IMG/VR virus record: IMGVR_UViG_3300042540_001399
Span: 1 to 64,000 of that record
Length of the DNA stretch: 64,000 nt
Strand: one strand, 5' to 3'
The first letter of the stretch is position 1. The number at the start of each line of letters is the position of its first letter. Shown piece by piece: positions 1 to 20,374 of the stretch. The translations under genes and the position numbers were made by a program. Under the pieces are notes generated by a model that was not told the origin of the DNA, ran no database searches, and worked only from the letters and a program-made list of their open reading frames with translations.

Positions 1-3000
1 TCAGGAACTAACGGTACTGATGGAACTTCAGGTACTAATGGAACTTCAGGTACTAATGGAACAGATGGTACTAGCGGAACAAACGGAACAGATGGTACAA
101 GCGGTACGAATGGAACTTCAGGAACAAATGGTACAGATGGAACTTCAGGAACAAATGGTACAGATGGAACTTCAGGAACAAACGGAACTTCAGGAACAAA
201 TGGTACATCAGGAACAAATGGTACTAGCGGCACAAACGGAAGTTCAGGAACAAACGGAACAAACGGAAGTTCAGGAACAAACGGAACTTCAGGAACAAAT
301 GGAACAAACGGAAGCTCAGGAACAAATGGTACTAATGGGTCAAGTGGAACAAACGGTACAAGCGGCACAGGTGGAACTTCGGGGACAAATGGGACTAGCG
401 GGACTAACGGTACAGACGGGACTAGCGGTTTATCGGGTGTAAACGGAACATCAGGTACTAATGGTACAGACGGTTCGAGCGGAACTAATGGGACTGATGG
501 GTCAAGTGGAACTAATGGGACTAGTGGAACATCAGGTACTAACGGAACTTCAGGAACGAATGGAACTTCAGGAAGTAATGGTACTGATGGTACAAGTGGT
601 ACTGATGGTACTGATGGATCTTCAGGAACAAATGGTACAAGCGGTACGAATGGAACAGATGGGACAAGCGGAACTAATGGTACGGACGGGTCAAGTGGAA
701 CTAATGGTACGGACGGTACTAATGGAACAGATGGAACCTCAGGAACTAATGGTACTGATGGAACAAGTGGTACTGATGGTACTGATGGATCTTCAGGAAC
801 AGATGGGACAAGCGGAACTAATGGTACTGACGGCACTTCAGGTACAAACGGAACAGATGGGACAAGTGGAACTAATGGTACGGACGGTACATCAGGTACA
901 AACGGTACAGATGGAACTTCAGGTACTGACGGAACTAGCGGTACGAATGGAACGGATGGTACAAGCGGAACAGATGGTACAAGCGGTACGAATGGTACTG
1001 ACGGAACTAGCGGAACAAATGGTACGGACGGAACTAGCGGAACAAATGGTACGGACGGCACTTCAGGGACTAACGGTACTGATGGCACAAATGGAACAGA
1101 TGGATCTTCAGGTACAAATGGTACTGACGGAACAAGTGGTACTAATGGAACTGATGGATCTTCAGGAACAGATGGTACTAGTGGTTTATCTGGTGTAAAT
1201 GGTACATCAGGAACTAACGGGACATCAGGTACAAACGGTACTGATGGAACTTCAGGAACTAATGGTACTAGCGGCACAAATGGGACTGATGGTACTTCAG
1301 GAACTAATGGTACGGACGGTACAAGTGGAACAGATGGAACTTCAGGAACGGATGGGTCAAGTGGTACAGATGGAACAAGTGGGTCTTCAGGAACAAATGG
1401 AACGGACGGAACTTCAGGAACAAATGGAACTAACGGAACAGATGGTACTAGCGGAACAAATGGAACAGATGGTACTAGCGGAACAAATGGTACAGATGGT
1501 ACTAGCGGAACTAACGGAAGTGACGGAACTTCAGGAACTAATGGTACTAACGGCTCAAGTGGAACTGATGGTACAAATGGTTCTTCAGGTACAAATGGAA
1601 CGGATGGTTCTAGCGGTACAGATGGTTCAAGTGGTACTAATGGTACTGACGGTAGTAGCGGAACTGATGGAACTTCAGGTACCGATGGTACGAATGGATC
1701 AAGCGGAACAGATGGAACTAGTGGAACAGACGGAACAAATGGTTCAAGTGGTACTAATGGGACTTCAGGTACAGATGGGACTAATGGGACAGACGGAACC
1801 TCAGGAACTGACGGAACAAATGGTTCAAGCGGAACAGACGGGACTAGCGGTACTAATGGTACTAATGGTAGTTCAGGTACAGATGGTACTAGCGGAACAA
1901 ACGGTACTGATGGGACTTCAGGTACAGATGGTACTAATGGAACTTCAGGTACAGATGGTACTAGCGGTACTGACGGAACTAACGGGACAGATGGAACTAG
2001 CGGAACTAACGGAACAGATGGTACTAGCGGGACAGATGGAACTTCAGGTACGAATGGTACAGATGGAACTAGTGGAACAGATGGTACAAACGGAACTAGT
2101 GGAACAGATGGAACAAACGGAACTAGTGGAACAGATGGAACAAGTGGAACTAATGGTACTAATGGAACCTCAGGAACTAATGGTACGGATGGTACAAGCG
2201 GGACTAATGGGACTAACGGAACGGATGGAACTAGCGGTACCAATGGTACAAATGGTAGTTCAGGCACTAACGGAACTTCAGGAACAAATGGAACAGATGG
2301 TACTAGTGGAACTAATGGTACGGATGGAACTAGCGGTACTAACGGAACAAATGGTTCGAGTGGAACAAATGGTACAGATGGTACTAGCGGGACAGATGGT
2401 ACTAGCGGAACTGATGGAACAAATGGTTCTTCAGGTACTAATGGTACTAACGGATCAAGCGGAACTGATGGAACAAGTGGAACTAATGGTACAGATGGAA
2501 CTTCAGGTACAAATGGTACAGACGGGTCTTCAGGAACAAACGGAACTAATGGTACTAGTGGAACTAATGGTACAGACGGAACTAGCGGAACAGATGGTAC
2601 TTCAGGGACTAATGGTACTGATGGGTCAAGTGGAACTAACGGAACTTCGGGTACAAATGGAACAGATGGAACTTCAGGAACAAATGGAACAAGTGGGACA
2701 GATGGTACTAATGGTACTGACGGTAGTAGCGGAACTAATGGAACTGACGGAACATCAGGCACCAACGGTACAGATGGTTCAAGTGGTACTGATGGGACAA
2801 GTGGTTTGTCTGGTGTAAATGGAACATCAGGGACAAATGGAACTAACGGTACTAATGGGACTTCGGGAACTAACGGTACAGATGGTTCAAGTGGTACTAA
2901 TGGTACGGACGGTACTAGCGGAACTAATGGAACAGATGGAACGAGCGGAACTGATGGTACAAATGGAACGAGCGGAACTAATGGTACAAATGGAACGGAT

Positions 3001-6000
3001 GGTACTAGCGGCACAAATGGAACAGACGGAACGAGCGGAACTGATGGTACAAATGGATCAAGTGGTACAAACGGAACAGATGGTTCAAGTGGTACTAATG
3101 GTACGGACGGAACTTCAGGTACAAATGGGACTGATGGTACAAGTGGTACTAACGGAACAAATGGTACGGATGGTACTAGTGGAACTGATGGTACTTCAGG
3201 AACTAACGGAACAAACGGTTCAAGTGGTACAGATGGTACTAGCGGTTCAAATGGAACTAACGGTACTAATGGTACAAGTGGAACAAATGGTACCAACGGA
3301 ACTAGCGGAACAAATGGTACCAATGGTTCTTCAGGTACTAATGGAACTAATGGTACTTCAGGAACTAACGGTACAAATGGGACTTCAGGCACTAACGGAA
3401 CAAACGGATCATCAGGCACAAACGGTACTAATGGAACTTCAGGAACTGACGGTACGTCGGGAACTAATGGTTCAAGTGGTACCAACGGTACTAGCGGAAC
3501 TAATGGGACATCAGGTACGAATGGTACGAATGGTACTAGCGGAACTAATGGAACGTCAGGTACCAACGGAACATCAGGAACTAATGGTACGAATGGCACT
3601 AGCGGTACGAACGGAACTAATGGAACTTCAGGAACCAATGGTACGAATGGAACTAACGGTACAAATGGGACTTCGGGAACTAATGGTACAAATGGAACTT
3701 CAGGGACTAACGGTACCAATGGGACTTCAGGAACAAATGGAACCAACGGTACAAGCGGAACTGATGGAACTTCGGGTACAAATGGTACAAACGGTACTTC
3801 AGGTACTAATGGAACATCGGGAACAAACGGAACTTCCGGTACGAATGGAACAAATGGCTCAAGCGGCACTAATGGAACATCAGGTACAAACGGAACGGAC
3901 GGAACTTCAGGAACAAATGGAACTAGCGGAACCAATGGAACTTCGGGCACTAATGGAACAAATGGATCAAGTGGTACGAATGGAACTTCAGGAACGAATG
4001 GTACCAATGGAACATCAGGTACTAATGGGACTTCTGGTACAAACGGAACAAATGGTTCAAGTGGGACTAACGGTACATCAGGTACGAATGGAACTTCTGG
4101 CACTAATGGTACGAATGGGTCTAGCGGAACAAATGGAACTTCAGGTACAAACGGAACGAATGGTACAAACGGAACATCAGGTACGAACGGAACTAGTGGA
4201 ACAAACGGGACTAATGGTACTAGCGGAACAAATGGTACAAACGGAACATCAGGAACCAATGGAACCAATGGTACAAACGGAACTTCAGGTACAAATGGAA
4301 CCAATGGAACATCGGGCACTAACGGTACTTCAGGTACTAACGGTACGAATGGAACATCAGGTACTAACGGAACTAATGGTACTTCAGGTACGAATGGCAC
4401 AAGCGGAACCAATGGTACAAACGGAACAAATGGAACTTCGGGCACAAATGGATCAAGTGGTACGAATGGAACTTCAGGAACTAATGGTACTAACGGTACA
4501 AGTGGAACCAATGGTACAAACGGAACATCAGGTACGAATGGAACTTCAGGTACCAACGGAACAAATGGAACATCAGGAACGAATGGTACTTCGGGAACTA
4601 ACGGGACAAATGGTACGTCGGGCACAAATGGTACCGATGGGACTTCAGGTACAAATGGAACCAATGGTACTAGCGGGACTAATGGAACAAACGGGACTAG
4701 CGGGACCAATGGAACAAACGGGACTTCAGGTACGAACGGAACCAATGGATCAAGTGGGACAAACGGAACATCAGGTACTAACGGTACCAACGGAACATCA
4801 GGAACTAACGGGACAAATGGAACGTCAGGTACTAATGGGACATCTGGCACTAATGGTACTTCAGGAACCAACGGGACTAGTGGTACGAACGGAACAAATG
4901 GTTCAAGTGGAACTAATGGAACATCAGGCACCAACGGGACTTCAGGTACTAATGGTACTAACGGAACTTCGGGAACTAATGGGACTAGCGGTACTAACGG
5001 AACTAATGGAACTTCAGGTACAAATGGAACTTCGGGTACTAATGGGACAAGTGGTACAAATGGAACTAATGGTACATCAGGAACCAATGGCACTTCGGGA
5101 ACTAACGGTACATCAGGTACGAATGGAACAAATGGTAGTAGCGGAACAAACGGAACATCAGGAACTAACGGTACTAATGGGTCTTCGGGAACAAATGGTA
5201 CGAGTGGAACTAATGGTACTAGCGGAACTAATGGTACAAATGGTACGAGTGGAACTAATGGAACATCAGGGACTAATGGAACCAACGGAACCAATGGATC
5301 AAGTGGGACAAACGGAACATCAGGTACTAACGGTACCAACGGAACATCAGGAACTAACGGGACAAATGGAACGTCAGGTACTAATGGAACTAGCGGCACA
5401 AATGGAACTAGCGGCACAAATGGAACAAACGGTTCAAGTGGTACTAACGGGACAAATGGAACCTCAGGTACTAACGGCACAAACGGCACATCAGGAACCA
5501 ACGGTACTAGCGGCACAAATGGAACAAACGGAACTAGTGGAACAAACGGAACTTCAGGTACTAATGGTACAAATGGAACTAGCGGTACTAACGGAACTTC
5601 AGGTACTAATGGAACATCAGGTACTAACGGAACAAACGGAACTTCAGGTACGAATGGAACTTCGGGTACTAATGGAACAAATGGTTCAAGTGGAACTAAC
5701 GGTACTAGCGGAACGAATGGAACTAGTGGTACTAACGGTACAAATGGTACTAGTGGAACAAATGGGACATCAGGAACTAATGGTACGAACGGCACATCAG
5801 GTACCAATGGTACAAATGGAACATCAGGTACAAACGGAACTAGCGGTACGAATGGAACCAATGGAACTAATGGTACAAATGGGACTTCAGGAACTAACGG
5901 TACTAATGGTACGTCGGGTACAAATGGAACAAATGGAACTTCAGGTACCAACGGAACCAATGGATCAAGTGGTACAAACGGAACGTCAGGCACAAATGGT

Positions 6001-9000
6001 ACGAACGGTACAAATGGAACTTCAGGAACCAATGGAACTTCGGGCACAAACGGAACTAGTGGAACAAACGGAACTTCAGGTACAAATGGAACGAATGGAA
6101 CCTCAGGAACAAATGGTACTAACGGCACATCAGGAACAAACGGTACATCAGGTACAAATGGAACTAATGGCACATCAGGGACAAATGGTACTAACGGAAC
6201 TAGTGGAACAAACGGCACAAATGGTTCAAGTGGAACCAACGGTACTAATGGAACCTCAGGAACTAATGGTACGTCAGGAACTAATGGTACAAACGGATCA
6301 AGTGGAACAAACGGTACATCAGGAACTAACGGAACAAATGGTACATCGGGTACTAACGGCACAAACGGAACGTCAGGAACAAATGGTACTTCAGGCACTA
6401 ACGGAACCAATGGAACAAACGGAACTTCAGGTACGAATGGAACAAACGGTACTAGCGGAACTAATGGTACTTCAGGTACTAATGGAACTTCGGGAACGAA
6501 CGGAACAAATGGTACTAGCGGAACAAATGGTACTTCAGGTACAAATGGAACTAGTGGGACTAACGGTACTAATGGGACTTCAGGAACAAACGGAACTAAT
6601 GGTACATCAGGTACGAATGGAACTAGCGGAACAAACGGAACTTCAGGAACAAATGGAACCAATGGAACATCAGGGACTAATGGTACAAACGGCACTTCAG
6701 GTACTAATGGAACAAATGGAACCTCAGGGACTAATGGTACAAACGGCACTTCAGGTACTAATGGAACATCAGGAACAAATGGTACAAATGGAACTTCGGG
6801 GACAAACGGTACTTCAGGAACTAATGGTACAAACGGTACTTCGGGCACGAATGGAACCAGCGGAACAAATGGTACATCAGGAACTAACGGGACTAGCGGA
6901 ACTAATGGAACATCAGGTACAAATGGTACAAACGGATCTTCAGGGACTAACGGAACGAATGGAACCTCAGGAACTAACGGAACGAATGGAACCTCAGGAA
7001 CTAACGGAACAAATGGTACATCGGGTACGAATGGAACTAATGGTACATCGGGTACGAATGGAACAAATGGAACATCAGGTACTAATGGAACTTCAGGAAC
7101 AAACGGTACTAACGGAACTTCAGGTACAAACGGTACAAATGGGACTTCAGGTACAAACGGAACTAGCGGAACAAATGGAACAAATGGAACCTCAGGGACT
7201 AATGGAACTAGTGGGACAAACGGAACATCGGGTACAAACGGGACTAGTGGAACGAATGGTACTTCAGGGACAAATGGAACAAATGGATCAAGTGGTACAA
7301 ACGGAACATCCGGTACTAATGGAACAAACGGTACTTCAGGAACAAACGGTACTAACGGAACTTCAGGTACAAACGGTACAAATGGGACTTCAGGTACAAA
7401 CGGAACTAGCGGAACAAATGGAACAAATGGAACCTCAGGGACTAATGGAACTAGTGGTGTTAGTGGTTTAAATGGTACAAACGGAACTTCAGGAACCAAT
7501 GGGACTAATGGAACATCGGGTACTAGAGGTACTTCAGGTACTAATGGGACAAATGGTTCTTCAGGAACTAGTGGAGGTGGAGGTGGAGGCGCAATTTCTA
7601 TTTATGACGAAGGAATTTTAGTTCAATCAAGTGCCACAAGTTTAAATTTTGTCGGTGTGTGTACTACAGCATCATCAGGCACAAGCGGATCAGTCACAGT
7701 AAATATTGGTTGTGGATGTGAATACGAATATATTAATATAGCGTCAAACTCAGGTTATTTAGAATTAGACAAACCAACCGATTTTACTAAAATATGGATT
7801 GGTAATAAATTGGGTGGTTGGAATTGTTGTCCTTGGGATTATTTTGAACCAGGGGTTAATGGTAATTTGTCAAGAACAAGATATCCTTATTATGGTGTGC
7901 CATTACCAACATCTTTATATCCAGGAGATGTTGTTAGAATTTGTGGTTCAATAACACAAATAAATCAGGGTGGTAATCCATGTTTAACTTATGATGATAT
8001 AAGAGTTGGAGTGTCTTATATCAGTTGTTCTGATTCTAGTGCAATTATATTTGCAAATACATTGATACCGGCTACTGATCTTATTTTAAATGGTAATGGT
8101 ACGGCTTGTTTTAATTTAGAAGTTGGTATAGACGTTACCCTACCGGCTTGTGATACTATGTTAACAGTTAATATTTCAACAACACAAGAAAGTGAATGTG
8201 ATAGAACTTTACACTTCAGTTATACGCTTAACGCCGATAGATATTGTCCAACTTTTGATCCAACCCCAAATCTTGTAGCACAAAATTGTTGTGATCCTTT
8301 GATCAAAGAAGTAATTCCAAAAGGTACATTACAAGTCGGTGATTTTTATGCCGATAGTGAAGGAAACTGTTGGGAAATTTTACAAAAAACGGGTGATGCT
8401 CCTGACTATACAAGAATAGTTTCCGCGACTTATAATTCATGTTCGGCTTGTATAACAGCAAATCCATGTCCTCAAAATATAGTGTTTGAATCTTGTTGTG
8501 AACAGGCCCCTGAAACATTTACAGGTTCATTACCTGGTATTAATGTAGGTGATGTGTTTGTTGATACTTATGGATTCTGTTGGAGCGCAACATCATTGAC
8601 TGTATCACCAGTTTCTGGTATCGTATATGTTGACACTAATTATGGAAACGTAGATTGTTTGAATTGTTTAACAGGTAACCCATGTCCTAATGTTTTTGAA
8701 TTACAACCTTGTTGTAAGTTTTTGGGAGGTCCTTTCTTTGTAACTGCAGCATCTTTAGGATACACACCAGTTGTAGGTGAAGTATTTGTTGATACATGGG
8801 GTAATTGTTGGACAGTTTCGAAAGATCAAGCGACAGGTCAAAATGTGACCGCTCCGTGGATTGTTCATGATACAAGTTACACAAGTTGTGAGTTGTGTTT
8901 AGCTTCCAACCCATGTCAAGATGACACAATAATTTATGCCACAGTAAGAAATTGTTGTTCAGGTGACGTTGAAGTTGTTGCGGTACCTATGGTTTATTTA

Positions 9001-12379: not shown

Positions 12380-13381
12380 ATGCCAAACTCAGTTAAATAT
12401 TCAACAACAGGGGATACTCGATCAATAAAAAAAGGAAATTTGTATTTTGGTGTTGGTGACGTTCCAAAAGGACCAAGTACCAACACATCTTATTTTAATG
12501 GTATTACACCTGTTACTGGTGGTTATACTGTATATAGGTACGAGCCAACACAAAGTAGTAAACTTGCTTTTTATACTAATCAAACAGGAACTGATCTTGT
12601 AAATTATACAAATAATTTTTTAGGACAAAACTTTTCAACATCAACACAATGTGTGAATTGGTTCAACACACAAACGAATTATGTTTGTGTAAATAAAGAC
12701 TATGACCCAATAATTACTTCAGGACTGACTCTATGTTTAGACGCGTCTTTCACCCCATCATATTCTACTTCTGGAAATTCTTGGTATGATTTATCATATA
12801 ATTCATTTACAACAACTTTAGTTAATGGACCAACATTTGATTCGGGAAATGGCGGATCAATACAGTTTGATGGAACCGACGATCAATGTGTAGTTACGTC
12901 AAATGGGTTTGGTACGTTCAATAATCAGAAATATACAATCGAGGCTTGGGTTAATTTTGCAAGTAATAGTGGGGATATTCCAATTTTTAGTTATGATTAT
13001 TCAAGTTTTAACAACCCATATTATTCTGCTCACCTTAGAAACACGGGTACGGGACAAATATTTTTAGGTTGGAACATGTCGGGATTTTATTACAATATAC
13101 AAACTACATCGACTGTGATTTTTCCCAATACTTGGTATTATGTTGTTGGTATTGTTGAAAGTGGAAGACAACAAATTTATGTTAATAGTAACTTGTGGGC
13201 TAGTGGGACTATATCAGGAACAATAACATTTTATAACACTCCTGTTTATGTTGGGTATTTTCCAAATGCACCTTTAGTCATGAATGGAAAAATTGCCGTG
13301 GTTAGAGTTTATAATAGAGCATTTTCTTCTTCAGAAGTAAGTCAAAATTGGAATGCACAAAAAACAAGATTCGGATATTAA
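12380..13381 (+). CDS. LamG/concanavalin A-like lectin domain virion protein
   Basis: LCLDAS..SY..SGNSWYDLS, FDGTDD, YTIEAWV, WYYVVG, GKIAVVRVYNRA, NWNAQKTRFG pattern of phage LamG proteins. Confidence 0.75.
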   Translation: MPNSVKYSTTGDTRSIKKGNLYFGVGDVPKGPSTNTSYFNGITPVTGGYTVYRYEPTQSSKLAFYTNQTGTDLVNYTNNFLGQNFSTSTQCVNWFNTQTNYVCVNKDYDPIITSGLTLCLDASFTPSYSTSGNSWYDLSYNSFTTTLVNGPTFDSGNGGSIQFDGTDDQCVVTSNGFGTFNNQKYTIEAWVNFASNSGDIPIFSYDYSSFNNPYYSAHLRNTGTGQIFLGWNMSGFYYNIQTTSTVIFPNTWYYVVGIVESGRQQIYVNSNLWASGTISGTITFYNTPVYVGYFPNAPLVMNGKIAVVRVYNRAFSSSEVSQNWNAQKTRFGY

Positions 13382-13422
13382 GGAATTAAATTTTGAAACA
13401 TAATATTTATTTAAAAAAAGTT

Positions 13423-14415
13423 ATGTCAACATCTAGACCTTTTTCATATAATACTGGCTCAACAATAAATGGTACAATACAAGTTGGAAGTTTGGCGGTA
13501 GGATTCCCAACCGTAGGATTTGATTCTACTGGTTTAGAATGGTGGAATGGTCCTGATGAAGATTTAGGTTATGTTATTGCACAACCCGTACCAAATGATA
13601 GTCAACCAACACCTGTGCTTGGACAAACCGCTTCTGTTGGTTTTTTTAGAACCAACGGTTTTGATGATAATGAATTTTTAGACATAACAAATATTTTGTT
13701 AGGAACAAATTATATAGATCCATTTTTAGCATCCTCTGCACTTACAGTAAATGGATTTTGGAATTCTTATCCTAATCCAGTTTTATATTTAGACGCTGGT
13801 GACCCTGCTAGTTATTCAGGAAGTGGTTCCGTTTGGATTGATACAATAGGAGGTAAAACTTTCAACTTAGTTAATGGACCATCTTACGGTCCTGGTTTTG
13901 GTGGAATTCTTAACTTCAACGCGTCAAGTGGTCAATACGCCCAATGTAACACGAGTTTACCAAATTTGAGTAATTGGACGGTTTCTGTTTGGAATTATTA
14001 TGATGGTACAAACGTCGGAGGAGCACCTTGTATTGTTACTGAAATTTATCCGGGTACTACAAGCAACATAAATTATTCAATTGGTGTGAATAATAGTGGA
14101 TTTAACGCCGGGTTTTTCAATGGGGCTTGGAGAGAAAGTGGAACCTATTCATTAAGTCCAAATAATTGGTATTTTATTGTTGGCACATATGATGGTAACA
14201 CATTGAAACTATATATTAATAATACTTTAGTTGGTACAGGAAATTACACTGGTACTCCTATATCATCTCAAGGAGGAATAAGGTTGATGAGAAGATGGGA
14301 TCTTCCCGATTATTGGGGCGGACTGTTAGGTACTGTTGGTATATATGACTTTGCACTCAATTCAGGACAAATATCTGCAATATGGAATACAACTAAATCA
14401 AGGTTTGGTTTGTAA
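13423..14415 (+). CDS. LamG/concanavalin A-like lectin domain virion protein
   Basis: LYLDAGDPASYSGSGSVW, WYFIVGTYDG..LKLYIN, IYDFALNS..WNTTKSRFGL. ATG 13423 after the TATTTAT motif is preferred to the track start at 13393. Confidence 0.75.
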   Translation: MSTSRPFSYNTGSTINGTIQVGSLAVGFPTVGFDSTGLEWWNGPDEDLGYVIAQPVPNDSQPTPVLGQTASVGFFRTNGFDDNEFLDITNILLGTNYIDPFLASSALTVNGFWNSYPNPVLYLDAGDPASYSGSGSVWIDTIGGKTFNLVNGPSYGPGFGGILNFNASSGQYAQCNTSLPNLSNWTVSVWNYYDGTNVGGAPCIVTEIYPGTTSNINYSIGVNNSGFNAGFFNGAWRESGTYSLSPNNWYFIVGTYDGNTLKLYINNTLVGTGNYTGTPISSQGGIRLMRRWDLPDYWGGLLGTVGIYDFALNSGQISAIWNTTKSRFGL

Positions 14416-14468
14416 AATCAAATATAAAATTTCTACATTTTATATTTCTTTAAGTTATATTTTAATTA

Positions 14469-15401
14469 ATGAAAGAAATTTGTATTGATGTTACAGGTTG
14501 TCGTGCTTTGGGCGACACTTTATGTGCAACACCTGTGGTTAAAAAAATAAGTAATACTTATAATAAAAAAGTTTCGGTAGTTTCTCACCACCCAAAATTA
14601 TTTACTAACTTATCATACGTTGAAAACAGTTTTGAATACAACCCAAAATTGTTTGATGATTTGAAAAAAGATTACGATATCTTTCCAACTTTTGATGTGT
14701 CATACAAAGACAATGGAATTTGTAACAAGCACAACTCTATGGATATAAGACAACTACACGCAATAAACTTAGGATTTATGTTGACTAAAGAAGAATCTTC
14801 TTTGGATTATGTACCAGATGCTTGTATCTTACCCATTTTACCAAAAAAATACGTTTTAATCCACCCCGTTCAAAATTGGAATTCAAGGACATGGCCGGCC
14901 AAAAATTGGCAAATATTAACAAAACTTTTAAATGAAAAAGGAATTTACGTTGTATCTGTTGGAAAAGATTCTTCTGAATTAGGTGGGTCTAATGTAGATA
15001 AACCCGTTTTCAATTTTGAAATAGAACTTGGATTAAATCTTATGAACAAAACAACTTTGGATGAAACATGGTATCTGTTAAATGGTTGTTCTTGTTTTGT
15101 AACTATGGACTCTGGACTATTACATTTAGCCGGTACAACAGATTGTGAAATACTACAACTTGGTAGCTCAATAGATCCTGAATTCAGAGCACCATATAGA
15201 CATGGTTCACAAGAATATAAGTATCATTATGTTAGAGGGGGTTGTGGTTTACATTGTGCTTCTGATATGAAGTATGGCGTTAGAGAATGGGGATCGATAC
15301 AAGGAATACCATCTTTAGTTAATTGTTTAGAAAGAAAAAAAACTTTTGAGTGTCATCCTTCTGTTTTACAGATTTATCAAAAAATCTTAGAAATAATATA
15401 A
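14469..15401 (+). CDS. GT9 (heptosyltransferase-like) glycosyltransferase
   Basis: ALGDTLCATP, YVLIHP...SRTWP..NW, FVTMDSGLLHLAG; C-terminal four-Cys cluster. Confidence 0.8.
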   Translation: MKEICIDVTGCRALGDTLCATPVVKKISNTYNKKVSVVSHHPKLFTNLSYVENSFEYNPKLFDDLKKDYDIFPTFDVSYKDNGICNKHNSMDIRQLHAINLGFMLTKEESSLDYVPDACILPILPKKYVLIHPVQNWNSRTWPAKNWQILTKLLNEKGIYVVSVGKDSSELGGSNVDKPVFNFEIELGLNLMNKTTLDETWYLLNGCSCFVTMDSGLLHLAGTTDCEILQLGSSIDPEFRAPYRHGSQEYKYHYVRGGCGLHCASDMKYGVREWGSIQGIPSLVNCLERKKTFECHPSVLQIYQKILEII

Positions 15402-15429
15402 GTTTGTATTTATTAAAAAAAACCAAACA

Positions 15430-15900
15430 GTGTCACAACAAATAACAATTACAGGAATAACAGGCACCCCACCATATGATATATATGTTTGTGATATAAC
15501 AAACACAATCTGTGTTTTTGTAACCGGATTAACTAGTTGTCCACCAACGTATAGTTTTTACGTCCCATCACCCTTAAATAATTCATCGTCTATTATTTTA
15601 AAGATAATTGATTCTGATGCTTGTGAAACCTTTCAACTTTTCAATTGTTTTACACCAACACCTACTCCAACACCTACCCCCACACCAAGTCCTTTACCCA
15701 CTTCTTGTAACTGTATTTCAGTAAGGTCAAACACAATGGATGGTGGAACATTTGATTTTATAGATTGTTTTGGAAATCTTAACACATTTGTCCCAGTACC
15801 TTTTGGTAGTACGTTGTATTTTTGTGGTTCGAACCCGTCCAATTTTAACAACGTAAATCTTACTGTTGGTTTACCATGTGTGCTTAATGTTTGTCCATAA
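15430..15900 (+). CDS. Small Cys-rich putative virion protein with a (PT)n linker
   Basis: Two beta-rich Cys-containing domains joined by TPTPTPTPTPTPSP; TATTTAT motif upstream. Confidence 0.55.
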   Translation: MSQQITITGITGTPPYDIYVCDITNTICVFVTGLTSCPPTYSFYVPSPLNNSSSIILKIIDSDACETFQLFNCFTPTPTPTPTPTPSPLPTSCNCISVRSNTMDGGTFDFIDCFGNLNTFVPVPFGSTLYFCGSNPSNFNNVNLTVGLPCVLNVCP

Positions 15901-15948
15901 AATTATTTATTTTGAATTTAAAAACCGTATTTTTATTCAAAAAACTAA

Positions 15949-17196
15949 ATGAAAATTTTTATACAAATTGCATCCTACAGAGATCCACAGTTATTACCCA
16001 CAATTAAAAACTGTATTGAAAATTCAAAACACCCCGAAAATTTAATTTTTTCAATTGCAAGACAATATCACATAGAAGATGGGTTTGATGATTTATCTGA
16101 ATTTGAAAACGACAATAGATTCAAAGTGATCAACATACCCTACACAGAATCCAAAGGGGTTTGTTGGGCAAGAAACATGACACAACAACAATACAATAAT
16201 GAAGAATATACCCTTCAAATTGACTCACACATGAGATTTGAAAAAAATTGGGATGAAACATTAATAGGTATGATTAAAGACTTACAGAAAAAAGGATTTA
16301 AAAAACCTTTACTAACAAGTTATGTTTCTTCATTCGATCCTGAAAACGATCCAACAGGAAGGGTAAATGAACCTTGGAGAATGGCTTTCGATAGATTCAC
16401 ACCCGAAGGTTGTGTTTTTTTCTTACCTGAAGTAATTCCTAATTGGAAAGAACTTGATGGTCCTGTACCATCAAGATTTTATTCCGCACATTTTTGTTTT
16501 ACCTTGGGTCAATTTTCTAAAGAAGTTCAGCACGATCCTGAATATTATTTTCATGGAGAAGAAATATCAATCGCCGTAAGAGCATTTACTCATGGATATG
16601 ATTTGTTTCACCCACACCGTGTGGTCATTTGGCATGAATACACAAGAAAGGGTAGAACAAAACAATGGGATGATGATAAAGAATGGTTTTTGAAAAATGA
16701 CTTTTCACACTCTAAAAACAGAAAACTATTAGGTGTTGACGGTGAAGAACTTGGGAATTTGTCAGACTCTTATGGATTTGGAAAACAAAGAACATTAAGA
16801 GATTATGAAAAATATTCAGGAATATTGTTTTCAAAAAGGGCGGTTCAAAAATATACTTTAGACAAAAATTACCCACCAAACCCAAACAATTTTTCTTCTG
16901 AAGAAGAATGGGAAAAAAGTTTCTCAATGATTTTCAAACACTGTATTGATGTATCATTTAATGACGTACCTGAAAATGATTATGAGTTTTGGGTTGTTGC
17001 CTTTCATAATGAAAAAGATGAAACATTATTTAGACATGATGCTGATGTAAAAGAAATAATTCAAATGAAAAAAGATCCTGATGGTTATTGTAAAGTATGG
17101 AGAGAATTTGATACAACTGAAAAACCCAAGTATTGGGTTGTTTGGCCCTATTCTAAATCCAAGGGATGGTGTAACAGATTAACAGGTAATTTATAA
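15949..17196 (+). CDS. GT60-family polypeptide alpha-GlcNAc transferase (Skp1 Gnt1-like)
   Basis: IFIQIASYRD, SKGVCWAR, LQIDSHMRF..NWD, FHGEEISIAVRAFTHGYDLFHP, WHEY motifs. Confidence 0.8.
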   Translation: MKIFIQIASYRDPQLLPTIKNCIENSKHPENLIFSIARQYHIEDGFDDLSEFENDNRFKVINIPYTESKGVCWARNMTQQQYNNEEYTLQIDSHMRFEKNWDETLIGMIKDLQKKGFKKPLLTSYVSSFDPENDPTGRVNEPWRMAFDRFTPEGCVFFLPEVIPNWKELDGPVPSRFYSAHFCFTLGQFSKEVQHDPEYYFHGEEISIAVRAFTHGYDLFHPHRVVIWHEYTRKGRTKQWDDDKEWFLKNDFSHSKNRKLLGVDGEELGNLSDSYGFGKQRTLRDYEKYSGILFSKRAVQKYTLDKNYPPNPNNFSSEEEWEKSFSMIFKHCIDVSFNDVPENDYEFWVVAFHNEKDETLFRHDADVKEIIQMKKDPDGYCKVWREFDTTEKPKYWVVWPYSKSKGWCNRLTGNL

Positions 17197-18200
17197 TGAT
17201 GGAACTTAACATTAGGCACGAATTTAGGGATCTCAGACTTGGTAACAATGAATTTTACGTTACAAGTTTTTTTAAAAAATTTTATGAAAGTTTAAAAACA
17301 AAATATCCTGAAATAAATTTTAGTATAAAAAATGAAACTTCTTTTGGGAAGTATGGTCAGGGGGGAATTTATAGCTGCATGAATTTTTCTATAGTGAACC
17401 CTATCAACAAAAAGTATGTCTTGATTTCTTTTTTTGATAATTGGAAATATCATTTCATGTCTCATTTAGGTTGGGAGGCTAATAAAATGGTTCAATTTTT
17501 TTATCCCGGCGGATTCAATTTTTATGATTATTTTACCTTTAAGGACACTTCAAAAAATAATTCTGACTTACAGTTTCCAAAAAACATGGACGATATTTTT
17601 ACCCCTTTTTATTATGGACCTTACTTTGATTGTTGTTATGAAGAAATTAATAACATATACAAACAAAATTTAAACAAGGAAAAAATCAATAAATTGTATT
17701 TCAGGGGTTGGATGTGGGATTTCAGAAAAGAAATGGTAAGTAAAATAAATCAAGAAGACATATTAATAATTGATAAAAATAAAAATAATCAGACTTTAAA
17801 TTACTTAGAATTTTTAGAAGATAGTTCCAAATATTCTGCGGTATTGAGTTTACCAGGTGGTAATGAAATGTGTAATAGAGATATAGAATGTTTTGGAATT
17901 GGAGTACCTGTAATAAGACCAGCAGTAAACGTAAAATACAAAGATCCTCTGATACCTAACTATCATTATATTAGTTGTTATGATTTTTGTGATTATTCAA
18001 TTGACGGAAATCCAAAATATATTTCCAACGAAGATTTTCAAAAAAATTTAATAAAAAAATGGAACTCAGTAAAAAATAATAAAGAATATTTAGATTTCGT
18101 TTCAAAAAATGCAAGATCTTGGTTTGAAAAAAATTGTAGGGTGGATAAAAATATAACGTGCGTTTTGGAACAATTAAACTTAGAAAAACTTTTTGAATAA
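17196..18200 (+). CDS. Putative GT-B glycosyltransferase (GT90/GT47-like C-terminal half)
   Basis: KLYFRG, LSLPGG...RDIE..GIGVPVIRP, LIPNYHYI, NARSWFEK; translationally coupled to its GT neighbours. Confidence 0.55.
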   Translation: MMELNIRHEFRDLRLGNNEFYVTSFFKKFYESLKTKYPEINFSIKNETSFGKYGQGGIYSCMNFSIVNPINKKYVLISFFDNWKYHFMSHLGWEANKMVQFFYPGGFNFYDYFTFKDTSKNNSDLQFPKNMDDIFTPFYYGPYFDCCYEEINNIYKQNLNKEKINKLYFRGWMWDFRKEMVSKINQEDILIIDKNKNNQTLNYLEFLEDSSKYSAVLSLPGGNEMCNRDIECFGIGVPVIRPAVNVKYKDPLIPNYHYISCYDFCDYSIDGNPKYISNEDFQKNLIKKWNSVKNNKEYLDFVSKNARSWFEKNCRVDKNITCVLEQLNLEKLFE

Positions 18201-19879
18201 TGATAACTTTAGTAACTGGATTGTGGGATATAGGTAGAGGTGACCTTAAAGAAGGGTGGTCAAGAAATTTTGATTTCTATTTAGAAAGATTTAGAGATAT
18301 TTTAAAAATAGATTGTAATCTTATTATTTTTGGTGATGAAGAATTACATAAGTTTGTATTATCAGAAAATAGGGACAAAACAAAAACAAAATTTATCACA
18401 AGAAACTTAGATTGGTTTAGAAACAACGAATATTTTGAAAAAATTCAAAACATAAGAAAAGACCCGAAATGGTTTAATCAAGTTGGGTGGTTAAAAGATT
18501 CGACCCAATCAACTTTAGAAATGTACAATCCTTTGGTCATGTCCAAAATGTTTTTATTACATGACGCGATGTTACTTGATCCATTCAATTCTGAAAAGTT
18601 ATATTGGATTGATGCGGGAATTACAAATACTGTAAATTTAGGTTATTTTACAAATGACGATGTTTTATCAAAAATTGACAAATTATTAAACAACTTTACT
18701 TTCTTAGCATTTCCTTATGAAACAGATACAGAAATACACGGATTTTCAATAAAAGGAATGACGGATTACATAGGAAAAAAACCAGATATGGTATGTAGGG
18801 GAGGATTTTTTGGTGGCCCAAAGCATTTAATTTCTGAAATGAATGTTAATTACTATCAAACATTAATTAGTACTCTTTCTGATGGATACATGGGAACAGA
18901 AGAAAGTATCTTTACTATTTTAACCTATAACTTACCTACCATAATAGATTTTTGTAAAATTGATTCTAATGGTTTAGTTTATAAATTTTTTGAAGACATA
19001 AAAAATAATCAAGTTGTTATAGAAAACACTTCGGTTACGAAGTTTGAAAAAAAACCAATATCATATTCTGGAGGCGTCGGATTATATGTTATAACATTTA
19101 ATTCACCAAAACAATTTGAAGTTTTGATTGAATCTATGTTAGAATACGATCCTTCGTTTTTAAGTAAAACTAAAAAGTTTTTATTGGATAATTCTACAGA
19201 TTTAACTACAAGTAAAGAATACAAAAATTTGTGTAGTTTATATGATTTTGAACATATCAAAAAAAATAATATAGGCATAACTGGTGGCAGACAATTTATC
19301 GCCGAACATTTTAACCAACAGGATGACTTGGATACTTATTATTTTTTTGAAGATGATATGGCTTTTTACAAAAAAGATTCCGGTGTTTGTAAAAATGGTT
19401 TTTCAAGATACATTAAACACATTTTTGATATTACTCAAGAAATAATAAAAAAAGAAAATTTTGATTTTTTAAAACTTAATTTTACCGAATTTTTTGGAAG
19501 TCATGATAAGCAGTGGGCTTGGTACAATGTACCTCAAACATTTAGGGAAAAACATTGGCCAAAAAACAAAAGTCTACCAAAACAAGGTTTGGACCCAAAT
19601 TCACCTAATTTAGAGTTCAAACATATAAAATCACATAGAGGTTTAGCATATGCATCAGGAGAAATTTATTTATCAAATTGGCCAATACTTATGACTAAAA
19701 ATGGTAATTATAATTGTTATCTGAAAACAAAATTTAAAAATCCTTATGAACAAACATTGATGAGCCATTGTTATCAAGAAACAATCAAAGGAAATATTTT
19801 TGGATCTGTTTTACTATTGACACCAACAGAACATAATAGATTTGACTTTTATGATTCTAAATTAAGAAAAGAATGTTGA
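18200..19879 (+). CDS. HtrL/YibB (WlaTC)-like glycosyltransferase fused to a GT2-like domain
   Basis: ITLVTGLWDIGR, YWIDAG, GGFFGG, GTEESIFT (HtrL); second half LYVITFN, LLDNS, NIGITGGRQ, FFEDD (GT-A). Confidence 0.7.
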   Translation: MITLVTGLWDIGRGDLKEGWSRNFDFYLERFRDILKIDCNLIIFGDEELHKFVLSENRDKTKTKFITRNLDWFRNNEYFEKIQNIRKDPKWFNQVGWLKDSTQSTLEMYNPLVMSKMFLLHDAMLLDPFNSEKLYWIDAGITNTVNLGYFTNDDVLSKIDKLLNNFTFLAFPYETDTEIHGFSIKGMTDYIGKKPDMVCRGGFFGGPKHLISEMNVNYYQTLISTLSDGYMGTEESIFTILTYNLPTIIDFCKIDSNGLVYKFFEDIKNNQVVIENTSVTKFEKKPISYSGGVGLYVITFNSPKQFEVLIESMLEYDPSFLSKTKKFLLDNSTDLTTSKEYKNLCSLYDFEHIKKNNIGITGGRQFIAEHFNQQDDLDTYYFFEDDMAFYKKDSGVCKNGFSRYIKHIFDITQEIIKKENFDFLKLNFTEFFGSHDKQWAWYNVPQTFREKHWPKNKSLPKQGLDPNSPNLEFKHIKSHRGLAYASGEIYLSNWPILMTKNGNYNCYLKTKFKNPYEQTLMSHCYQETIKGNIFGSVLLLTPTEHNRFDFYDSKLRKEC

Positions 19880-19906
19880 TTGATATATTTATAATAAAAA
19901 CAATTA

Positions 19907-20374
19907 ATGGAATTTTTTATTAAAAAGAATGCCACTCTCCCTTTGTTGAAAATGCAGGTTGTTAAGGATGGTAGGAGTGATTTTAACAAGATGATGGATC
20001 TAATTGAAAGCTCTGCTGTGTTTTTTTCTATGGTTGACATAGAAACAGGTATACCTAAAATTGTTACAAGACCGGCAGGATTTGTGTCCAAAAAATTGTT
20101 AGACCCAAACGCCGACCCTGAATATTATATATATTATCAATTTACAAACAAAGACACAAAAAAAGTCGGAAGATACGAAGGTCAATTTCTTTTTAGAAAT
20201 GATGACGGTGTATTAATTTTACCAATTAGAGAAAAGTTATTTATAAATGTACAAGAAAGTTTTATTGCTGATGACTTACCATATGATTCTTGTTATGTAA
20301 GTGAATTCCCTTGTTGTATTTCACCCAACCCATTTCCACCAAACACAACAACAACCACAACTTTATTTTTTTAA
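19907..20374 (+). CDS. BppU-like (baseplate upper protein N-domain-like) virion protein with Thr-rich tail
   Basis: FFIKKNATLPLLKMQV...YQFT..DT...GRYEGQF...LILP pattern; ends PPNTTTTTTLFF. Confidence 0.5.
   Translation: MEFFIKKNATLPLLKMQVVKDGRSDFNKMMDLIESSAVFFSMVDIETGIPKIVTRPAGFVSKKLLDPNADPEYYIYYQFTNKDTKKVGRYEGQFLFRNDDGVLILPIREKLFINVQESFIADDLPYDSCYVSEFPCCISPNPFPPNTTTTTTLFF

What the first reader, a model, noticed from the sequence alone, without database searches (positions are those of the whole stretch)
1..20374. Candidate phage-encoded virion protein glycosylation system: protein-acceptor glycosyltransferases clustered with their likely substrates
Seen: five GT genes (about 7 GT domains plus a methyltransferase) are interleaved with fibre, lectin and decoration genes carrying Thr/Ser/Asn-dense tracts. 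Known: TibC/Aah enzymes put heptose on Ser of proteins, and GT60 enzymes put alpha-GlcNAc on hydroxyproline or on Thr-rich mucin peptides, so two of these GTs resemble protein-initiating families rather than LPS or DNA modifiers. GT4, GT9, HtrL, GT2 and FkbM domains could extend and methyl-cap the glycans. Inference: the phage builds a glycan coat on a giant fibre, the sheath and accessory proteins, for stability, adhesion or shielding. Virion glycosylation is known in some actinobacteriophages and giant viruses, but I do not know this enzyme set or a GTN-repeat substrate from a tailed phage.
Basis: partly seen in the sequence, partly recalled or inferred. Interest (0 to 1): 0.9.

Follow-up and report, generated by a model that had tools for sequence, protein, structure and literature searches.

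The report
Phage sugar-coating genes beside giant collagen-like fibre
A large freshwater phage carries a cluster of protein-type sugar-adding enzymes right next to a gene for a proline-free collagen-like fibre of over 3,100 residues, a pairing that recurs in many phages and some bacteria and suggests the enzymes coat the fibre with sugars.

Summary
Window 1-20374 encodes a giant fibre protein, cut at the window's 5' end. It has 841 uninterrupted Gly-X-Y triplets (X mostly Thr; Y = Asn/Ser/Asp; no Pro) and a 593-aa Cys-rich C-terminus.

Five glycosyltransferase genes follow, mixed with two ConA-like lectin-fold genes and two small Cys-rich or Thr-rich genes.

- **Strongest result.** The middle domain of the 972-aa enzyme (9405-12323, minus strand) belongs to the TibC/Aah protein O-heptosyltransferase family. 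It scores E=1e-63 against the TibC structure and 281 bits against an NCBIfam cut-off of 200. The catalytic Asp, three of four sugar-nucleotide-binding residues and all four iron-finger Cys are kept. The Arg that contacts adenine is not.
- **Other enzymes.** A second enzyme is a clear GT60 (PF11397). A third, with no family hit, folds as a GT-B transferase.
- **Linkage.** 29 of 48 distinct phage relatives of the TibC-like domain have a Ser/Thr-rich collagen-like gene in the fetched locus (within about 10-15 kb), against 0 of 80 control viral loci. In bacterial genomes the figures are 17 of 29 close relatives against 1 of 50 classical ones.

Best reading: the phage glycosylates its own collagen-like tail fibre. 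No biochemical evidence exists yet. It is a new variant of virion glycosylation.

The parts
1..9372 (+). Giant collagen-like tail-fibre gene, 5'-truncated by the window. The full ORF in a contig whose GT cluster and fibre C-terminus are identical is about 3,300 aa, with an N-terminal domain of about 90 aa.
   Evidence: Frame-1 ORF. Complete copy in L047 and L126. A homologue's N-terminus hits PHROG tail-fibre families.
1..7572 (+). Collagen-type repeat of 841 uninterrupted Gly-X-Y triplets (GTN 409, GTS 260, GTD 104, GSS 55). It has no Pro and 415 N-G-[ST] motifs. About 720 nm long if it forms a triple helix.
   Evidence: Pfam PF01391 at 255 bits and collagen-like tail-fibre PHROGs.
7591..9369 (+). 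Cys-rich C-terminal region of 593 aa, following a Gly6 run. By eye it holds about five modules of roughly 70-80 aa, each starting with CC and ending with C-x2-C ... NPC. Presumed distal or receptor-binding end.
   Evidence: Sequence. No Pfam, PHROG or NCBIfam hit. Only 33-35% relatives in L016 and L051. Self-BLAST found no significant internal repeat.
11127..12323 (-). GT4 (Glycos_transf_1) domain, residues 1-399 of the 972-aa enzyme. Presumed glycan-extending transferase.
   Evidence: PF00534 E=8e-16, residues 197-362.
10092..11126 (-). TibC/Aah-type protein O-heptosyltransferase (BAHT, bacterial autotransporter heptosyltransferase) domain, residues 400-744. Presumed initiating enzyme.
   Evidence: TibC structures 4RB4/4RAP at E=1e-63. 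TIGR04414 at 281 bits against a cut-off of 200. Asp473, Thr588, Lys592, Trp663 and Cys698/701/715/727 are invariant in 48 phage homologues.
9405..10091 (-). FkbM-family methyltransferase domain, residues 745-972, plus the stop codon. Presumed sugar O-methyl cap.
   Evidence: PF05050 E=8e-11 and TIGR01444 at 52.6 bits.
12380..13381 (+). ConA-like / Laminin_G_3 protein A (333 aa). Probable virion accessory or fibre protein.
   Evidence: PF13385 E=6e-22. phrog_8510 'virion structural protein'.
13393..14415 (+). ConA-like / Laminin_G_3 protein B (340 aa).
   Evidence: PF13385 E=1.5e-18.
14469..15401 (+). Stand-alone GT9 heptosyltransferase-like enzyme (310 aa). It accompanies the TibC-like gene in most of the closer relatives.
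   Evidence: PF01075 E=1.6e-16. Best PDB match is WaaF, 1e-8. Co-occurrence.
15430..15900 (+). Small Cys-rich protein (156 aa), apparently two halves joined by a (TP)n linker at nt 15652-15693. Homologues of about 100 aa usually sit next to GT60.
15949..17196 (+). GT60-family (PF11397 'GlcNAc') glycosyltransferase, 415 aa.
   Evidence: PF11397 E=5e-70, 237 bits against a cut-off of 21. phrog_24687 E=1e-164. D92-S93-H94 invariant in 11 homologues.
17196..18200 (+). GT-B-fold glycosyltransferase (334 aa) with no sequence-family hit. Nearest folds include GT90/CAP10-type and other protein O-glycosyltransferases.
   Evidence: AlphaFold2 pLDDT 94.1. Foldseek against PDB and BFVD returns GT-B transferases almost throughout, probability 1.0, TM 0.36-0.52.
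18200..19879 (+). HtrL_YibB-domain protein (559 aa). The C-terminal half is unassigned.
   Evidence: PF09612 E=3e-18 for residues 2-252. 40% identical to XacN1 ORF330. No GT2 hit in 9 homologues. Structure model failed.
19907..20374 (+). 155-aa protein ending in a poly-Thr tail (nt 20345-20362). Homologues carry variable poly-T or (TP)n tails and lie close to the HtrL-like gene.
32324..32398 (+). Poly-Thr insert (aa 292-316) in the 1107-aa tail sheath. A candidate extra acceptor only.
   Evidence: Not present in sheath homologues of related loci.

Best explanation
The cluster is a phage-encoded protein-glycosylation system, and its main substrate is the neighbouring giant collagen-like tail fibre.

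Shown
- The 972-aa enzyme has a TibC/Aah-type protein O-heptosyltransferase domain with an intact catalytic Asp, phosphate- and sugar-binding residues and iron finger. It is fused to a GT4 domain and an FkbM methyltransferase domain.
- This enzyme type is genetically coupled to Ser/Thr-rich Gly-X-Y proteins across many phages and in some bacteria.

Inferred mechanism
- In the infected cell the TibC-like domain puts a first sugar, most likely a heptose, on Ser of the repeat. Thr is possible too. Ser at position Y is the feature most widely shared by the partner proteins.
- The GT4 domain and the stand-alone GT9 extend the glycan, and the FkbM domain methylates it.
- The resulting glycan sleeve stabilises or shields a proline-free triple helix about 0.7 um long, which ends in a Cys-rich distal domain.

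Second module (inferred more weakly)
- GT60, the HtrL-like protein and the GT-B enzyme probably decorate Thr/Pro-rich tails and linkers of small neighbouring proteins.
For: Enzyme identity
- TibC structures match at E=1e-63, and TIGR04414 scores 281 bits against a cut-off of 200.
- I mapped the residues from the TibC paper (PMC4358343) onto the alignment. The catalytic Asp110 equivalent, Thr226, Lys230, Trp305 and Cys339/342/358/370 are all present. They are invariant in 48 distinct phage homologues.

Linkage
- 29 of 48 distinct phage TibC-like domains have a collagen-like ORF of at least 20 triplets in the fetched locus. The figure is 21 of 29 when at least 5 kb is available on both sides. 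In the closest relatives the two genes are end to end and convergent.
- Control: 0 of 80 viral loci (891 kb) fetched with an unrelated marker have such an ORF.
- In bacterial genomes, 17 of 29 loci at 40% identity or more have one, against 1 of 50 at 36-39%, the classical autotransporter type (Fisher p=1e-8).
- The trait is clustered on the domain tree: 20 changes against 39.8 expected, with 0 of 500 shuffles as low.
- The pairing holds in Microcystis phage Mel-JY01, in a 735-kb phage, and in a Methylomicrobium chromosome, where the partner is a 233-aa (GTS)17 protein with a signal-peptide-like N-terminus.

Partner composition
- Ser is frequent at position Y in the G-[TS]-type partners (33-99%) and lower (22-34%) in the Pro/Gln-richer partners of L056 and L058. 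Asn varies from 0 to 64%. This fits TibC's Ser specificity.

Heptose link
- In other phages the TibC-like gene sits beside genes whose best matches are heptose-7-phosphate kinase and ADP-heptose 6-epimerase (below cut-offs), and beside a cytidylyltransferase-like gene. 15 of 80 kinase-marker loci also hold a TibC-like gene.

Fibre identity
- Pfam Collagen and collagen-like tail-fibre PHROGs match the repeat. A homologue's N-terminus hits tail-fibre PHROGs.

Precedent
- XacN1, which shares the GT60 and the HtrL-like protein and has its own GT9 gene, has at least two virion glycoproteins according to its authors.
Against: - No glycan, mass shift or virion proteome is available for this phage. 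Everything about the substrate rests on gene neighbourhood.
- The Arg that contacts adenine N1 in TibC is Val here and is not Arg in 47 of 48 phage domains. The donor may therefore not be ADP-heptose.
- No heptose-pathway gene lies in the 64-kb window. A search for one in the rest of the genome was inconclusive.
- TibC recognises a folded beta-helix and modifies Ser, not Thr. A collagen-type chain would be a new kind of acceptor.
- One phage clade of TibC-like enzymes (38-58% identity) has no collagen-like neighbour.
- 7 of 15 testable GTN/GTS collagen-like genes have no GT within 5-11 kb downstream.
- Whether a Pro-free G-T-N/S chain forms a triple helix at all is untested.
Confidence: 0.6

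Rival explanations
1. The transferases remodel the host cell envelope (LPS core or O-antigen, or host surface proteins) during infection, for example to block superinfection. They merely sit in a fibre gene module.
For: GT9, GT4 and HtrL_YibB are typical of LPS-core (waa) loci. The 310-aa GT9 matches WaaF and WaaC best. BFVD neighbours of the 334-aa protein are often named 'lipopolysaccharide-modifying'.
Against: The TibC/Aah family and GT60 have only protein acceptors among characterised members (GT60 acceptors from general knowledge). LPS remodelling gives no reason for the tight, convergent adjacency to collagen-like genes kept across distant phages and in a bacterial chromosome.
Confidence: 0.12
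2. The enzymes glycosylate other virion proteins (capsid, tail tube, ConA-like proteins, small Thr-rich proteins), as in mycobacteriophages. The collagen-like fibre is not the acceptor.
For: The cluster also holds Thr/Pro-rich small proteins, and their homologues keep such tails. Some relatives carry (TP)n or TPTNT-repeat proteins beside the enzyme in place of, or as well as, a collagen-like gene (L017, L025, L045). A clade of TibC-like enzymes has no collagen neighbour.
Against: The collagen-like gene is by far the most consistent neighbour of this enzyme type, and its Ser/Thr-rich composition is the conserved feature. The TP linker and the sheath Thr insert are not conserved.
Confidence: 0.15
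3. The repeat is not a rigid triple helix but a flexible, mucin-like Ser/Thr/Asn brush, glycosylated or not, that acts as a long tether or hair.
For: There is no Pro at all, and Asp is almost the only charged residue in the repeat. Known bacterial collagens rely on Pro or charge pairs (general knowledge). No trimerisation domain was identified.
Against: Gly sits in every third position for 841 triplets without one interruption, despite diverged codons. That is the signature of a structure needing Gly at the helix axis. Pfam Collagen matches strongly.
Confidence: 0.2
4. The transferases hypermodify phage DNA with sugars to evade restriction.
For: Phage GTs often do this (reviewed in the text quoted). 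The cluster abuts the DNA polymerase gene.
Against: None of the domains belongs to a known DNA-glycosyltransferase family. The only trace is an E=0.09 TAGT (TET-associated DNA glycosyltransferase, Pfam PF20691) hit in one homologue. No hydroxymethylase or related base-modification gene was found among the window ORFs scanned.
Confidence: 0.03

Closest known systems
TibC / Aah bacterial autotransporter heptosyltransferases (BAHT family, GT9)
   Same: The catalytic domain is homologous over about 335 residues (E=1e-63). The catalytic Asp, Thr/Lys/Trp ligand contacts and the four-Cys iron finger are conserved. In both cases the enzyme gene lies next to the gene of a long, repetitive, Ser-rich surface protein.
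   Different: The partner is a collagen-type Gly-X-Y protein, not a beta-helical autotransporter. The domain is fused to GT4 and FkbM domains. The Arg that contacts adenine and the Pro that sets stereoselectivity are replaced (Val and Gly). It is encoded by phages.
Virion glycosylation in mycobacteriophages (Freeman et al. 2023, as cited in PMC12619734) and the glycoproteins reported for jumbo phage XacN1 (PMC5852040)
   Same: Phage-encoded transferases sit next to structural genes and are thought to decorate virion proteins. XacN1 has homologues of the GT60 and HtrL-like proteins (45% and 40% identity) and its own GT9 gene.
   Different: Those systems have no TibC-type enzyme and no collagen-like substrate. 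XacN1's giant neighbouring protein (ORF325) has no Gly-X-Y repeat. The acceptors in mycobacteriophages are the C-termini of capsid and tail-tube subunits.
Chlorovirus PBCV-1 A064R (two GT domains plus a methyltransferase) and mimivirus L230 acting on viral collagen-like proteins
   Same: One viral polypeptide combines two transferase domains with a methyltransferase to build and methyl-cap a virion glycan. A virus glycosylates its own collagen-like proteins (PMC9614988).
   Different: No sequence relationship is known. A064R extends an N-glycan on the capsid protein. L230 hydroxylates Lys and adds Glc, whereas this repeat has no Lys or Pro, and O-linkage to Ser/Thr is expected here.
BclA-type collagen-like glycoproteins of the Bacillus exosporium nap, and the Thr-glycosylated cuticle collagen of Riftia (from general knowledge, not tested here)
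   Same: Thr-rich Gly-X-Y repeats carry O-glycans. In Riftia, glycosylated Thr takes over the stabilising role of hydroxyproline.
   Different: In those proteins Thr sits at position Y with Pro at X. Here Thr is at X with Asn/Ser/Asp at Y, and there is no Pro. The enzymes are unrelated.
GT60 enzymes (Skp1 hydroxyproline GlcNAc-transferase Gnt1; trypanosome mucin Thr alpha-GlcNAc-transferase)
   Same: The 415-aa protein matches PF11397 at 237 bits and has an invariant D-S-H motif. It sits close to proteins with Thr/Pro-rich tails.
   Different: It is a phage/bacterial branch with no characterised member and no solved relative by sequence. Acceptor and sugar are unknown.

Membership tests
TibC/Aah O-heptosyltransferase (BAHT, NCBIfam TIGR04414) | Whole-domain profile score above the curated equivalog cut-off | tested here: met
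   281.4 bits against a cut-off of 200, residues 400-743. TibC chains 4RB4/4RAP at E=1e-63.
TibC/Aah O-heptosyltransferase (BAHT, NCBIfam TIGR04414) | Catalytic base Asp110 and ligand contacts Thr226, Lys230 and Trp305 | tested here: met
   Aligned residues are Asp473, Thr588, Lys592 and Trp663. They are invariant in 48 phage homologues.
TibC/Aah O-heptosyltransferase (BAHT, NCBIfam TIGR04414) | Arg286 contact to adenine N1 (ADP-sugar specificity) | tested here: not met
   Val644 here. The 48 phage domains have V, T, L or I in 47 cases and R in 1.
TibC/Aah O-heptosyltransferase (BAHT, NCBIfam TIGR04414) | Four-Cys iron-finger motif (Cys339, 342, 358, 370) | tested here: met
   Cys698, 701, 715 and 727 are invariant in 48 homologues.
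TibC/Aah O-heptosyltransferase (BAHT, NCBIfam TIGR04414) | Partner gene is an autotransporter with a beta-helical passenger domain | tested here: not met
   No autotransporter in the window. The neighbour is a collagen-like protein. Classical relatives (36-39% identity) lack collagen neighbours, 1 of 50.
TibC/Aah O-heptosyltransferase (BAHT, NCBIfam TIGR04414) | Transfers heptose to Ser of a protein; forms a dodecamer | not testable with these tools
   Needs an enzyme assay and mass spectrometry. Indirect support only: heptose kinase-like and epimerase-like genes lie next to homologues in other phages.
GT60 (Pfam PF11397 'GlcNAc') | Profile score above the gathering threshold | tested here: met
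   237.1 bits against a cut-off of 21, E=5e-70.
GT60 (Pfam PF11397 'GlcNAc') | Transfers GlcNAc to hydroxyproline or Thr of a polypeptide | not testable with these tools
   No solved or characterised close relative. Only neighbourhood to Thr/Pro-rich tails.
Collagen triple-helix repeat proteins (Pfam PF01391) | Uninterrupted Gly at every third residue; profile match | tested here: met
   841 of 841 triplets. 255 bits on 530 aa.
Collagen triple-helix repeat proteins (Pfam PF01391) | Stabilising Pro/Hyp or charge pairs, and a trimerisation domain | tested here: not met
   No Pro, and almost the only charged residue is Asp at 12.5% of Y positions. No recognisable trimerisation domain in the flanks.
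Phage virion-glycosylation systems | Phage-encoded GT genes adjacent to virion structural genes | tested here: met
   Cluster lies between the fibre gene and ConA-like 'virion structural' homologues.
Phage virion-glycosylation systems | Glycan demonstrated on virion proteins | not testable with these tools
   Uncultured phage. Only the report of glycoproteins in the related XacN1.
GT2 (claimed for the C-terminal half of the 559-aa protein) | Profile or fold match to GT-A/GT2 | tested here: inconclusive
   No Pfam hit in 9 homologues. No PDB hit. Model pLDDT 36.8, unusable. Only an FFEDDM motif is seen by eye.

The most novel reading that the evidence does not exclude
A distinct branch of the TibC/Aah heptosyltransferase family, found in many aquatic phages and some bacteria, is dedicated to proline-free collagen-like (Gly-Thr/Ser-Ser/Asn) proteins. 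Dense O-glycosylation takes over the role of hydroxyproline and lets phages build sugar-sheathed triple-helical fibres up to about 0.75 um long.
Probability: 0.3. Interest if true: 0.85.

Novelty: new variant of a known kind. Interest (0 to 1): 0.7.

Why it matters
Virion glycosylation by phage-encoded enzymes is documented for only a few phages, and the BAHT family is known only as a partner of autotransporter adhesins in Gram-negative pathogens.

If the link holds, three things follow.
- The substrate range of that enzyme family extends to collagen-type proteins.
- It would explain how a collagen helix with no proline can exist.
- It points to a widespread, unstudied kind of very long glycosylated fibre on aquatic jumbo phages, with consequences for host encounter, adsorption and particle stability.

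It also gives a defined enzyme-substrate pair that can be tested in E. coli. I found no paper combining collagen-like proteins with heptosyltransferases in the searchable library.

Tried and rejected
- **Nucleotide search in isolated phages.** A megablast of 9405-23293 against the isolated-phage collection found nothing.
- **Fibre C-terminal region.** It has no Pfam, PHROG or NCBIfam hit. The big protein search found no homologue. Self-BLAST found no significant internal repeat, and it shows no similarity to the 156-aa Cys-rich protein.
- **GT60.** Neither the single sequence nor an 11-member profile matched any solved structure.
- **HtrL-like 559-aa protein.** The profile found no solved structure. 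The AlphaFold model from a 7-sequence alignment failed at pLDDT 36.8. Pfam on nine homologues showed no GT2. I therefore dropped the GT2 claim.
- **310-aa GT9.** I rejected the idea that it is a second TibC-type enzyme. Only the generic LGDTL motif is shared.
- **TP linker as GT60 target.** I rejected the idea that the TP linker of the 156-aa protein is the conserved GT60 target, because most homologues lack it.
- **Sheath as a conserved target.** Rejected, because sheath homologues have no Thr insert.
- **Reverse test.** Asking whether every GTN/GTS collagen-like gene has a GT was only partly possible. The loci returned by the pattern scan are short, and 7 of 15 usable cases have none nearby.
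- **Heptose-pathway gene elsewhere in this phage's genome.** Inconclusive. The window's contigs were not among the best 80 of 236 hits.
- **tRNA scan.** No tRNA genes in the window.

Full report
**What is there**

The window comes from a large myovirus-type phage. It encodes a tail sheath (31451-34774), a family-B DNA polymerase (20480-23293), an SNF2 helicase, a gp32-like SSB, a UvsX-like recombinase, a DnaB-like helicase, a ribonucleotide reductase and a baseplate wedge protein. The GT cluster and the fibre C-terminus are 100% identical at protein level in three IMG/VR contigs of 274-291 kb from different metagenomes.

Region 1-20374 holds the following.
- A frame-1 ORF that runs off the 5' end and stops at 9372.
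- A 972-aa gene on the minus strand (9405-12323), convergent with that ORF.
- Eight plus-strand genes up to 20374.
- The other long ORFs listed inside 1-7471 are frame-2 readings of the same repeat and are artefacts.

**The giant protein**

Residues 2-2524 are 841 Gly-X-Y triplets with Gly in every one and no interruption. X is Thr (92%) or Ser (7%). Y is Asn (49%), Ser (38%) or Asp (12.5%). There is no proline.

A 530-aa slice scores 255 bits against Pfam Collagen and hits the PHROG families named 'collagen like minor tail' and 'tail fiber protein'.

The DNA copies are only 60-67% alike. Synonymous codons are mixed, and Ser uses both TCN and AGY codons (first 280 triplets). The periodicity is therefore kept at the protein level and is not a simple-sequence or assembly artefact.

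A Gly6 run and a 593-aa Cys-rich region follow. By eye this region holds about five modules of roughly 70-80 aa, each starting with CC and ending in C-x2-C...NPC. Nothing in any library matches it.

A complete copy in a contig with an identical GT cluster is 3,314 codons stop to stop: an N-terminal domain of about 90 aa, 873 triplets and the same C-terminus. In a homologue at about 35% identity in the C-terminal region (L016), the longer N-terminal domain hits tail-fibre PHROGs at 8.6e-22.

If the repeat forms a collagen-type helix at about 0.29 nm per residue (textbook value), it is 0.72-0.75 um long.

**The enzymes**

*The 972-aa protein* has three domains.
- GT4: PF00534, residues 197-362.
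- TibC-like domain, residues 400-744.
- FkbM methyltransferase.

The middle domain matches the crystal-structure sequences of TibC at E=1e-63 over 335 residues. It passes NCBIfam's equivalog model for 'autotransporter strand-loop-strand O-heptosyltransferase' at 281 bits against a cut-off of 200.

I took the functional residues from the TibC structure paper (PMC4358343) and mapped them onto the alignment.
- The catalytic base is present (Asp110 in TibC, Asp473 here).
- The phosphate and sugar contacts are present (Thr226, Lys230, Trp305).
- All four iron-finger cysteines are present.
- All of these are invariant in 48 distinct phage homologues.
- Arg286, which contacts adenine N1, is Val here. 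It is Arg in only one of the 48.
- Pro300, the D,D/L,D-heptose selector, is Gly.

So the fold and the chemistry are those of the family, but the nucleotide-sugar may differ.

*The other four genes:*
- The 310-aa protein is a GT9, closest to WaaF and WaaC. It shares only the LGDTL motif with the TibC-like domain.
- The 415-aa protein is an unambiguous PF11397/GT60 member (237 bits) with an invariant D-S-H motif.
- The 334-aa protein has no family hit. With 31 homologues in the alignment it folds at pLDDT 94 into a GT-B transferase. Its nearest structures include protein O-glucosyltransferase 2, chlorovirus A075L, GtfA and SdgB, and GT90/CAP10-type viral proteins.
- The 559-aa protein has an HtrL_YibB N-terminal half. 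I could not assign its C-terminal half.

**Is the enzyme tied to the fibre?**

A scan of IMG/VR found 283 relatives of the 972-aa enzyme, and I kept the best 80. Adding one isolated and two uncultured phage records gave 48 distinct TibC-like domains.
- 29 of the 48 have a collagen-like ORF of at least 20 triplets in the fetched locus.
- The figure is 21 of 29 where at least 5 kb is available on both sides.
- It is 22 of 29 among domains at least 60% identical to the window's. Several of the exceptions there are contigs that end just beyond the enzyme gene.
- In the closest relatives the fibre gene ends within about 30-300 bp of the enzyme's 3' end, in convergent orientation.

The pairing persists in distant cases.
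- At 35-51% identity the partner repeat becomes (GSS)n or a Pro/Gln-containing type (L056, L058, L059). L060 and L061, at 58-64% identity, carry a (GSS)n-type partner.
- Microcystis phage Mel-JY01 has an unannotated plus-strand ORF of about 1,016 codons of GSS/GTS/GTR triplets, 1.7 kb upstream of a 1,226-aa GT4...TibC-like protein annotated 'methyltransferase FkbM'.
- A 735-kb uncultured phage also shows it.

Two controls bear on chance.
- 80 viral loci (891 kb) fetched with an unrelated marker contain no such ORF.
- In one representative genome per bacterial species, 17 of the 29 closest relatives (at least 40% identity) have a G-[TS]-[SA] collagen-like ORF nearby. Only 1 of the 50 at 36-39% does; these are the classical type in Citrobacter, Escherichia, Caballeronia and Lentisphaerae (Fisher p=1e-8).

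One bacterial example is clearly chromosomal. In Methylomicrobium oryzae the TibC-like gene is convergent with a 233-aa (GTS)17 protein that has a signal-peptide-like N-terminus. Its neighbours are a subtilase and an ECF sigma/anti-sigma pair.

On a tree of 136 domains the 'collagen neighbour' label needs 20 changes against 39.8 expected, and none of 500 shuffles is as low. The label is clustered but does not form one clade.

The reverse test is weaker. Of 15 GTN/GTS collagen-like genes with at least 4 kb of downstream sequence, 7 have the TibC-like gene and 7 have no GT. The stored pieces are too short to say whether a GT lies elsewhere in those genomes.

**Which sugar, which residue?**

Ser is frequent at position Y in the G-[TS]-type partners (33-99%) and lower (22-34%) in the Pro/Gln-richer ones, while Asn ranges from 0 to 64%. 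TibC and Aah modify Ser and not Thr. I infer that the Ser residues of G-T-S and G-S-S triplets are the likeliest sites. That is 377 Ser in the window's part of the protein.

Heptose is supported indirectly.
- In other phages the TibC-like gene is followed by genes whose best matches are heptose-7-phosphate kinase (126 bits) and ADP-heptose 6-epimerase (179 bits). Both are below the curated cut-offs.
- A cytidylyltransferase-like gene also follows.
- 15 of 80 kinase-marker loci hold a TibC-like gene within 6 kb.
- No such pathway gene is in this window, and the missing Arg leaves the nucleotide open.

I also note 415 N-G-[ST] motifs, the sequon of cytoplasmic N-glycosyltransferases. No GT41-type enzyme is present.

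**The second module**

GT60, the HtrL-like protein and the 155-aa protein travel together in relatives.
- Homologues of the 155-aa protein keep an N-terminal domain of about 130 aa, followed by variable poly-Thr or (TP)n tails. This suits what is known of GT60 acceptors (general knowledge).
- In several relatives a small collagen-like gene sits between the small Cys-rich protein and GT60.
- The window's own TP linker and sheath Thr insert are not conserved.
- XacN1 and three other jumbo phages carry the GT60 at 43-45% identity. XacN1 and Xoo-sp13 also carry the HtrL-like protein at 40%, and XacN1 has a GT9 gene annotated nearby. The XacN1 authors saw at least two virion glycoproteins and proposed these enzymes as responsible.

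**Mechanism I commit to (confidence 0.6)**

A phage-encoded, cytoplasmic O-glycosylation line works on the fibre.
1. The TibC-like domain starts the glycan on Ser, and perhaps Thr, of the fibre chain.
2. The GT4 domain and the GT9 enzyme extend it.
3. The FkbM domain methylates it.

The architecture parallels chlorovirus A064R, which has two transferase domains plus a methyltransferase acting on a virion glycan. The logic parallels mimivirus L230 acting on viral collagen (PMC9614988).

What the glycan does is inference: stabilising a helix that lacks proline, keeping a very long fibre soluble, or shielding it. Enzyme identity and gene linkage are shown. The transfer, the sugar, the sites and the triple helix are not.

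**Verdict**

Three corrections apply.
- The substrate is a collagen-type repeat.
- The sheath and the GT2 domain are unsupported.
- The donor may not be ADP-heptose.

It is a new variant of a known kind, virion protein glycosylation, that uses an enzyme family not known from phages on a substrate class not known for that family. I found no paper joining collagen-like proteins and heptosyltransferases in the searchable library.

Noticed in passing
window 24766-26898 (-): A 710-aa phage protein carries a complete Fe/Mn superoxide dismutase (both Pfam halves, E=1e-39 and 1e-20) embedded between unassigned N- and C-terminal regions.
   Followed up: no
window 39378-44216 and 44531-50938 (+): Two very large ORFs (1612 and 2135 aa) downstream of the sheath have no Pfam or PHROG hit at all.
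   Followed up: no
L082 (Microcystis phage Mel-JY01, PP395634) 2-3049 (+): A plus-strand ORF of about 1,016 codons made of GSS/GTS/GTR collagen-like triplets is not annotated. The record instead annotates two minus-strand 'hypothetical proteins' (1-651, 739-2298) over the same DNA, probably the wrong strand. More GTS-type stretches lie at 9143-9983.
   Followed up: partly
L216 (Candidatus Methylomicrobium oryzae RS1) 9755-11825: A chromosomal TibC-like gene is convergent with a 233-aa (GTS)17 collagen-like protein that has a signal-peptide-like N-terminus. It lies next to a subtilase and an ECF sigma/anti-sigma pair. Similar pairs occur in Polaromonas and other MAGs (L209, L211, L213, L215, L233).
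   Followed up: partly
L055 7088-7828 and 12606-13517; L072 12100-16656; L284-L363: Heptose-7-phosphate-kinase-like genes are common in viral contigs (236 relatives). 15 of the 80 fetched lie within 6 kb of a TibC-like gene, and none of those has a collagen-like gene nearby. L055 also has an ADP-heptose-epimerase-like gene. The target of this TibC-like clade is unknown.
   Followed up: partly
L017 5101-6876 and 12980-14998 (-): In one relative the enzyme is flanked by proteins made of TPTNT(L)TPTNT repeats rather than by a long Gly-X-Y protein. A collagen-like fragment sits at the contig end. This may be an alternative acceptor type.
   Followed up: no
window 1-7572; loci L005, L018-L020, L097, L138 and others: Many metagenomic contigs begin or end inside these repeats. 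The three contigs with an identical GT cluster hold different triplet counts (840+, 873, 900+). Repeat length is not reliably assembled, and such fibre genes are probably under-called in databases.
   Followed up: partly
window 1-7572 (+): The repeat contains 415 N-G-[ST] motifs, the sequon used by cytoplasmic N-glycosyltransferases, although no GT41-type enzyme is in the cluster.
   Followed up: no
L207, L219, L222, L223, L228 (genome contigs): Several of the closest 'bacterial' relatives are low-GC contigs binned with Bacteroidota MAGs, one of them 254 kb long. They may be mis-binned jumbo phages and hint at a Bacteroidota host.
   Followed up: no
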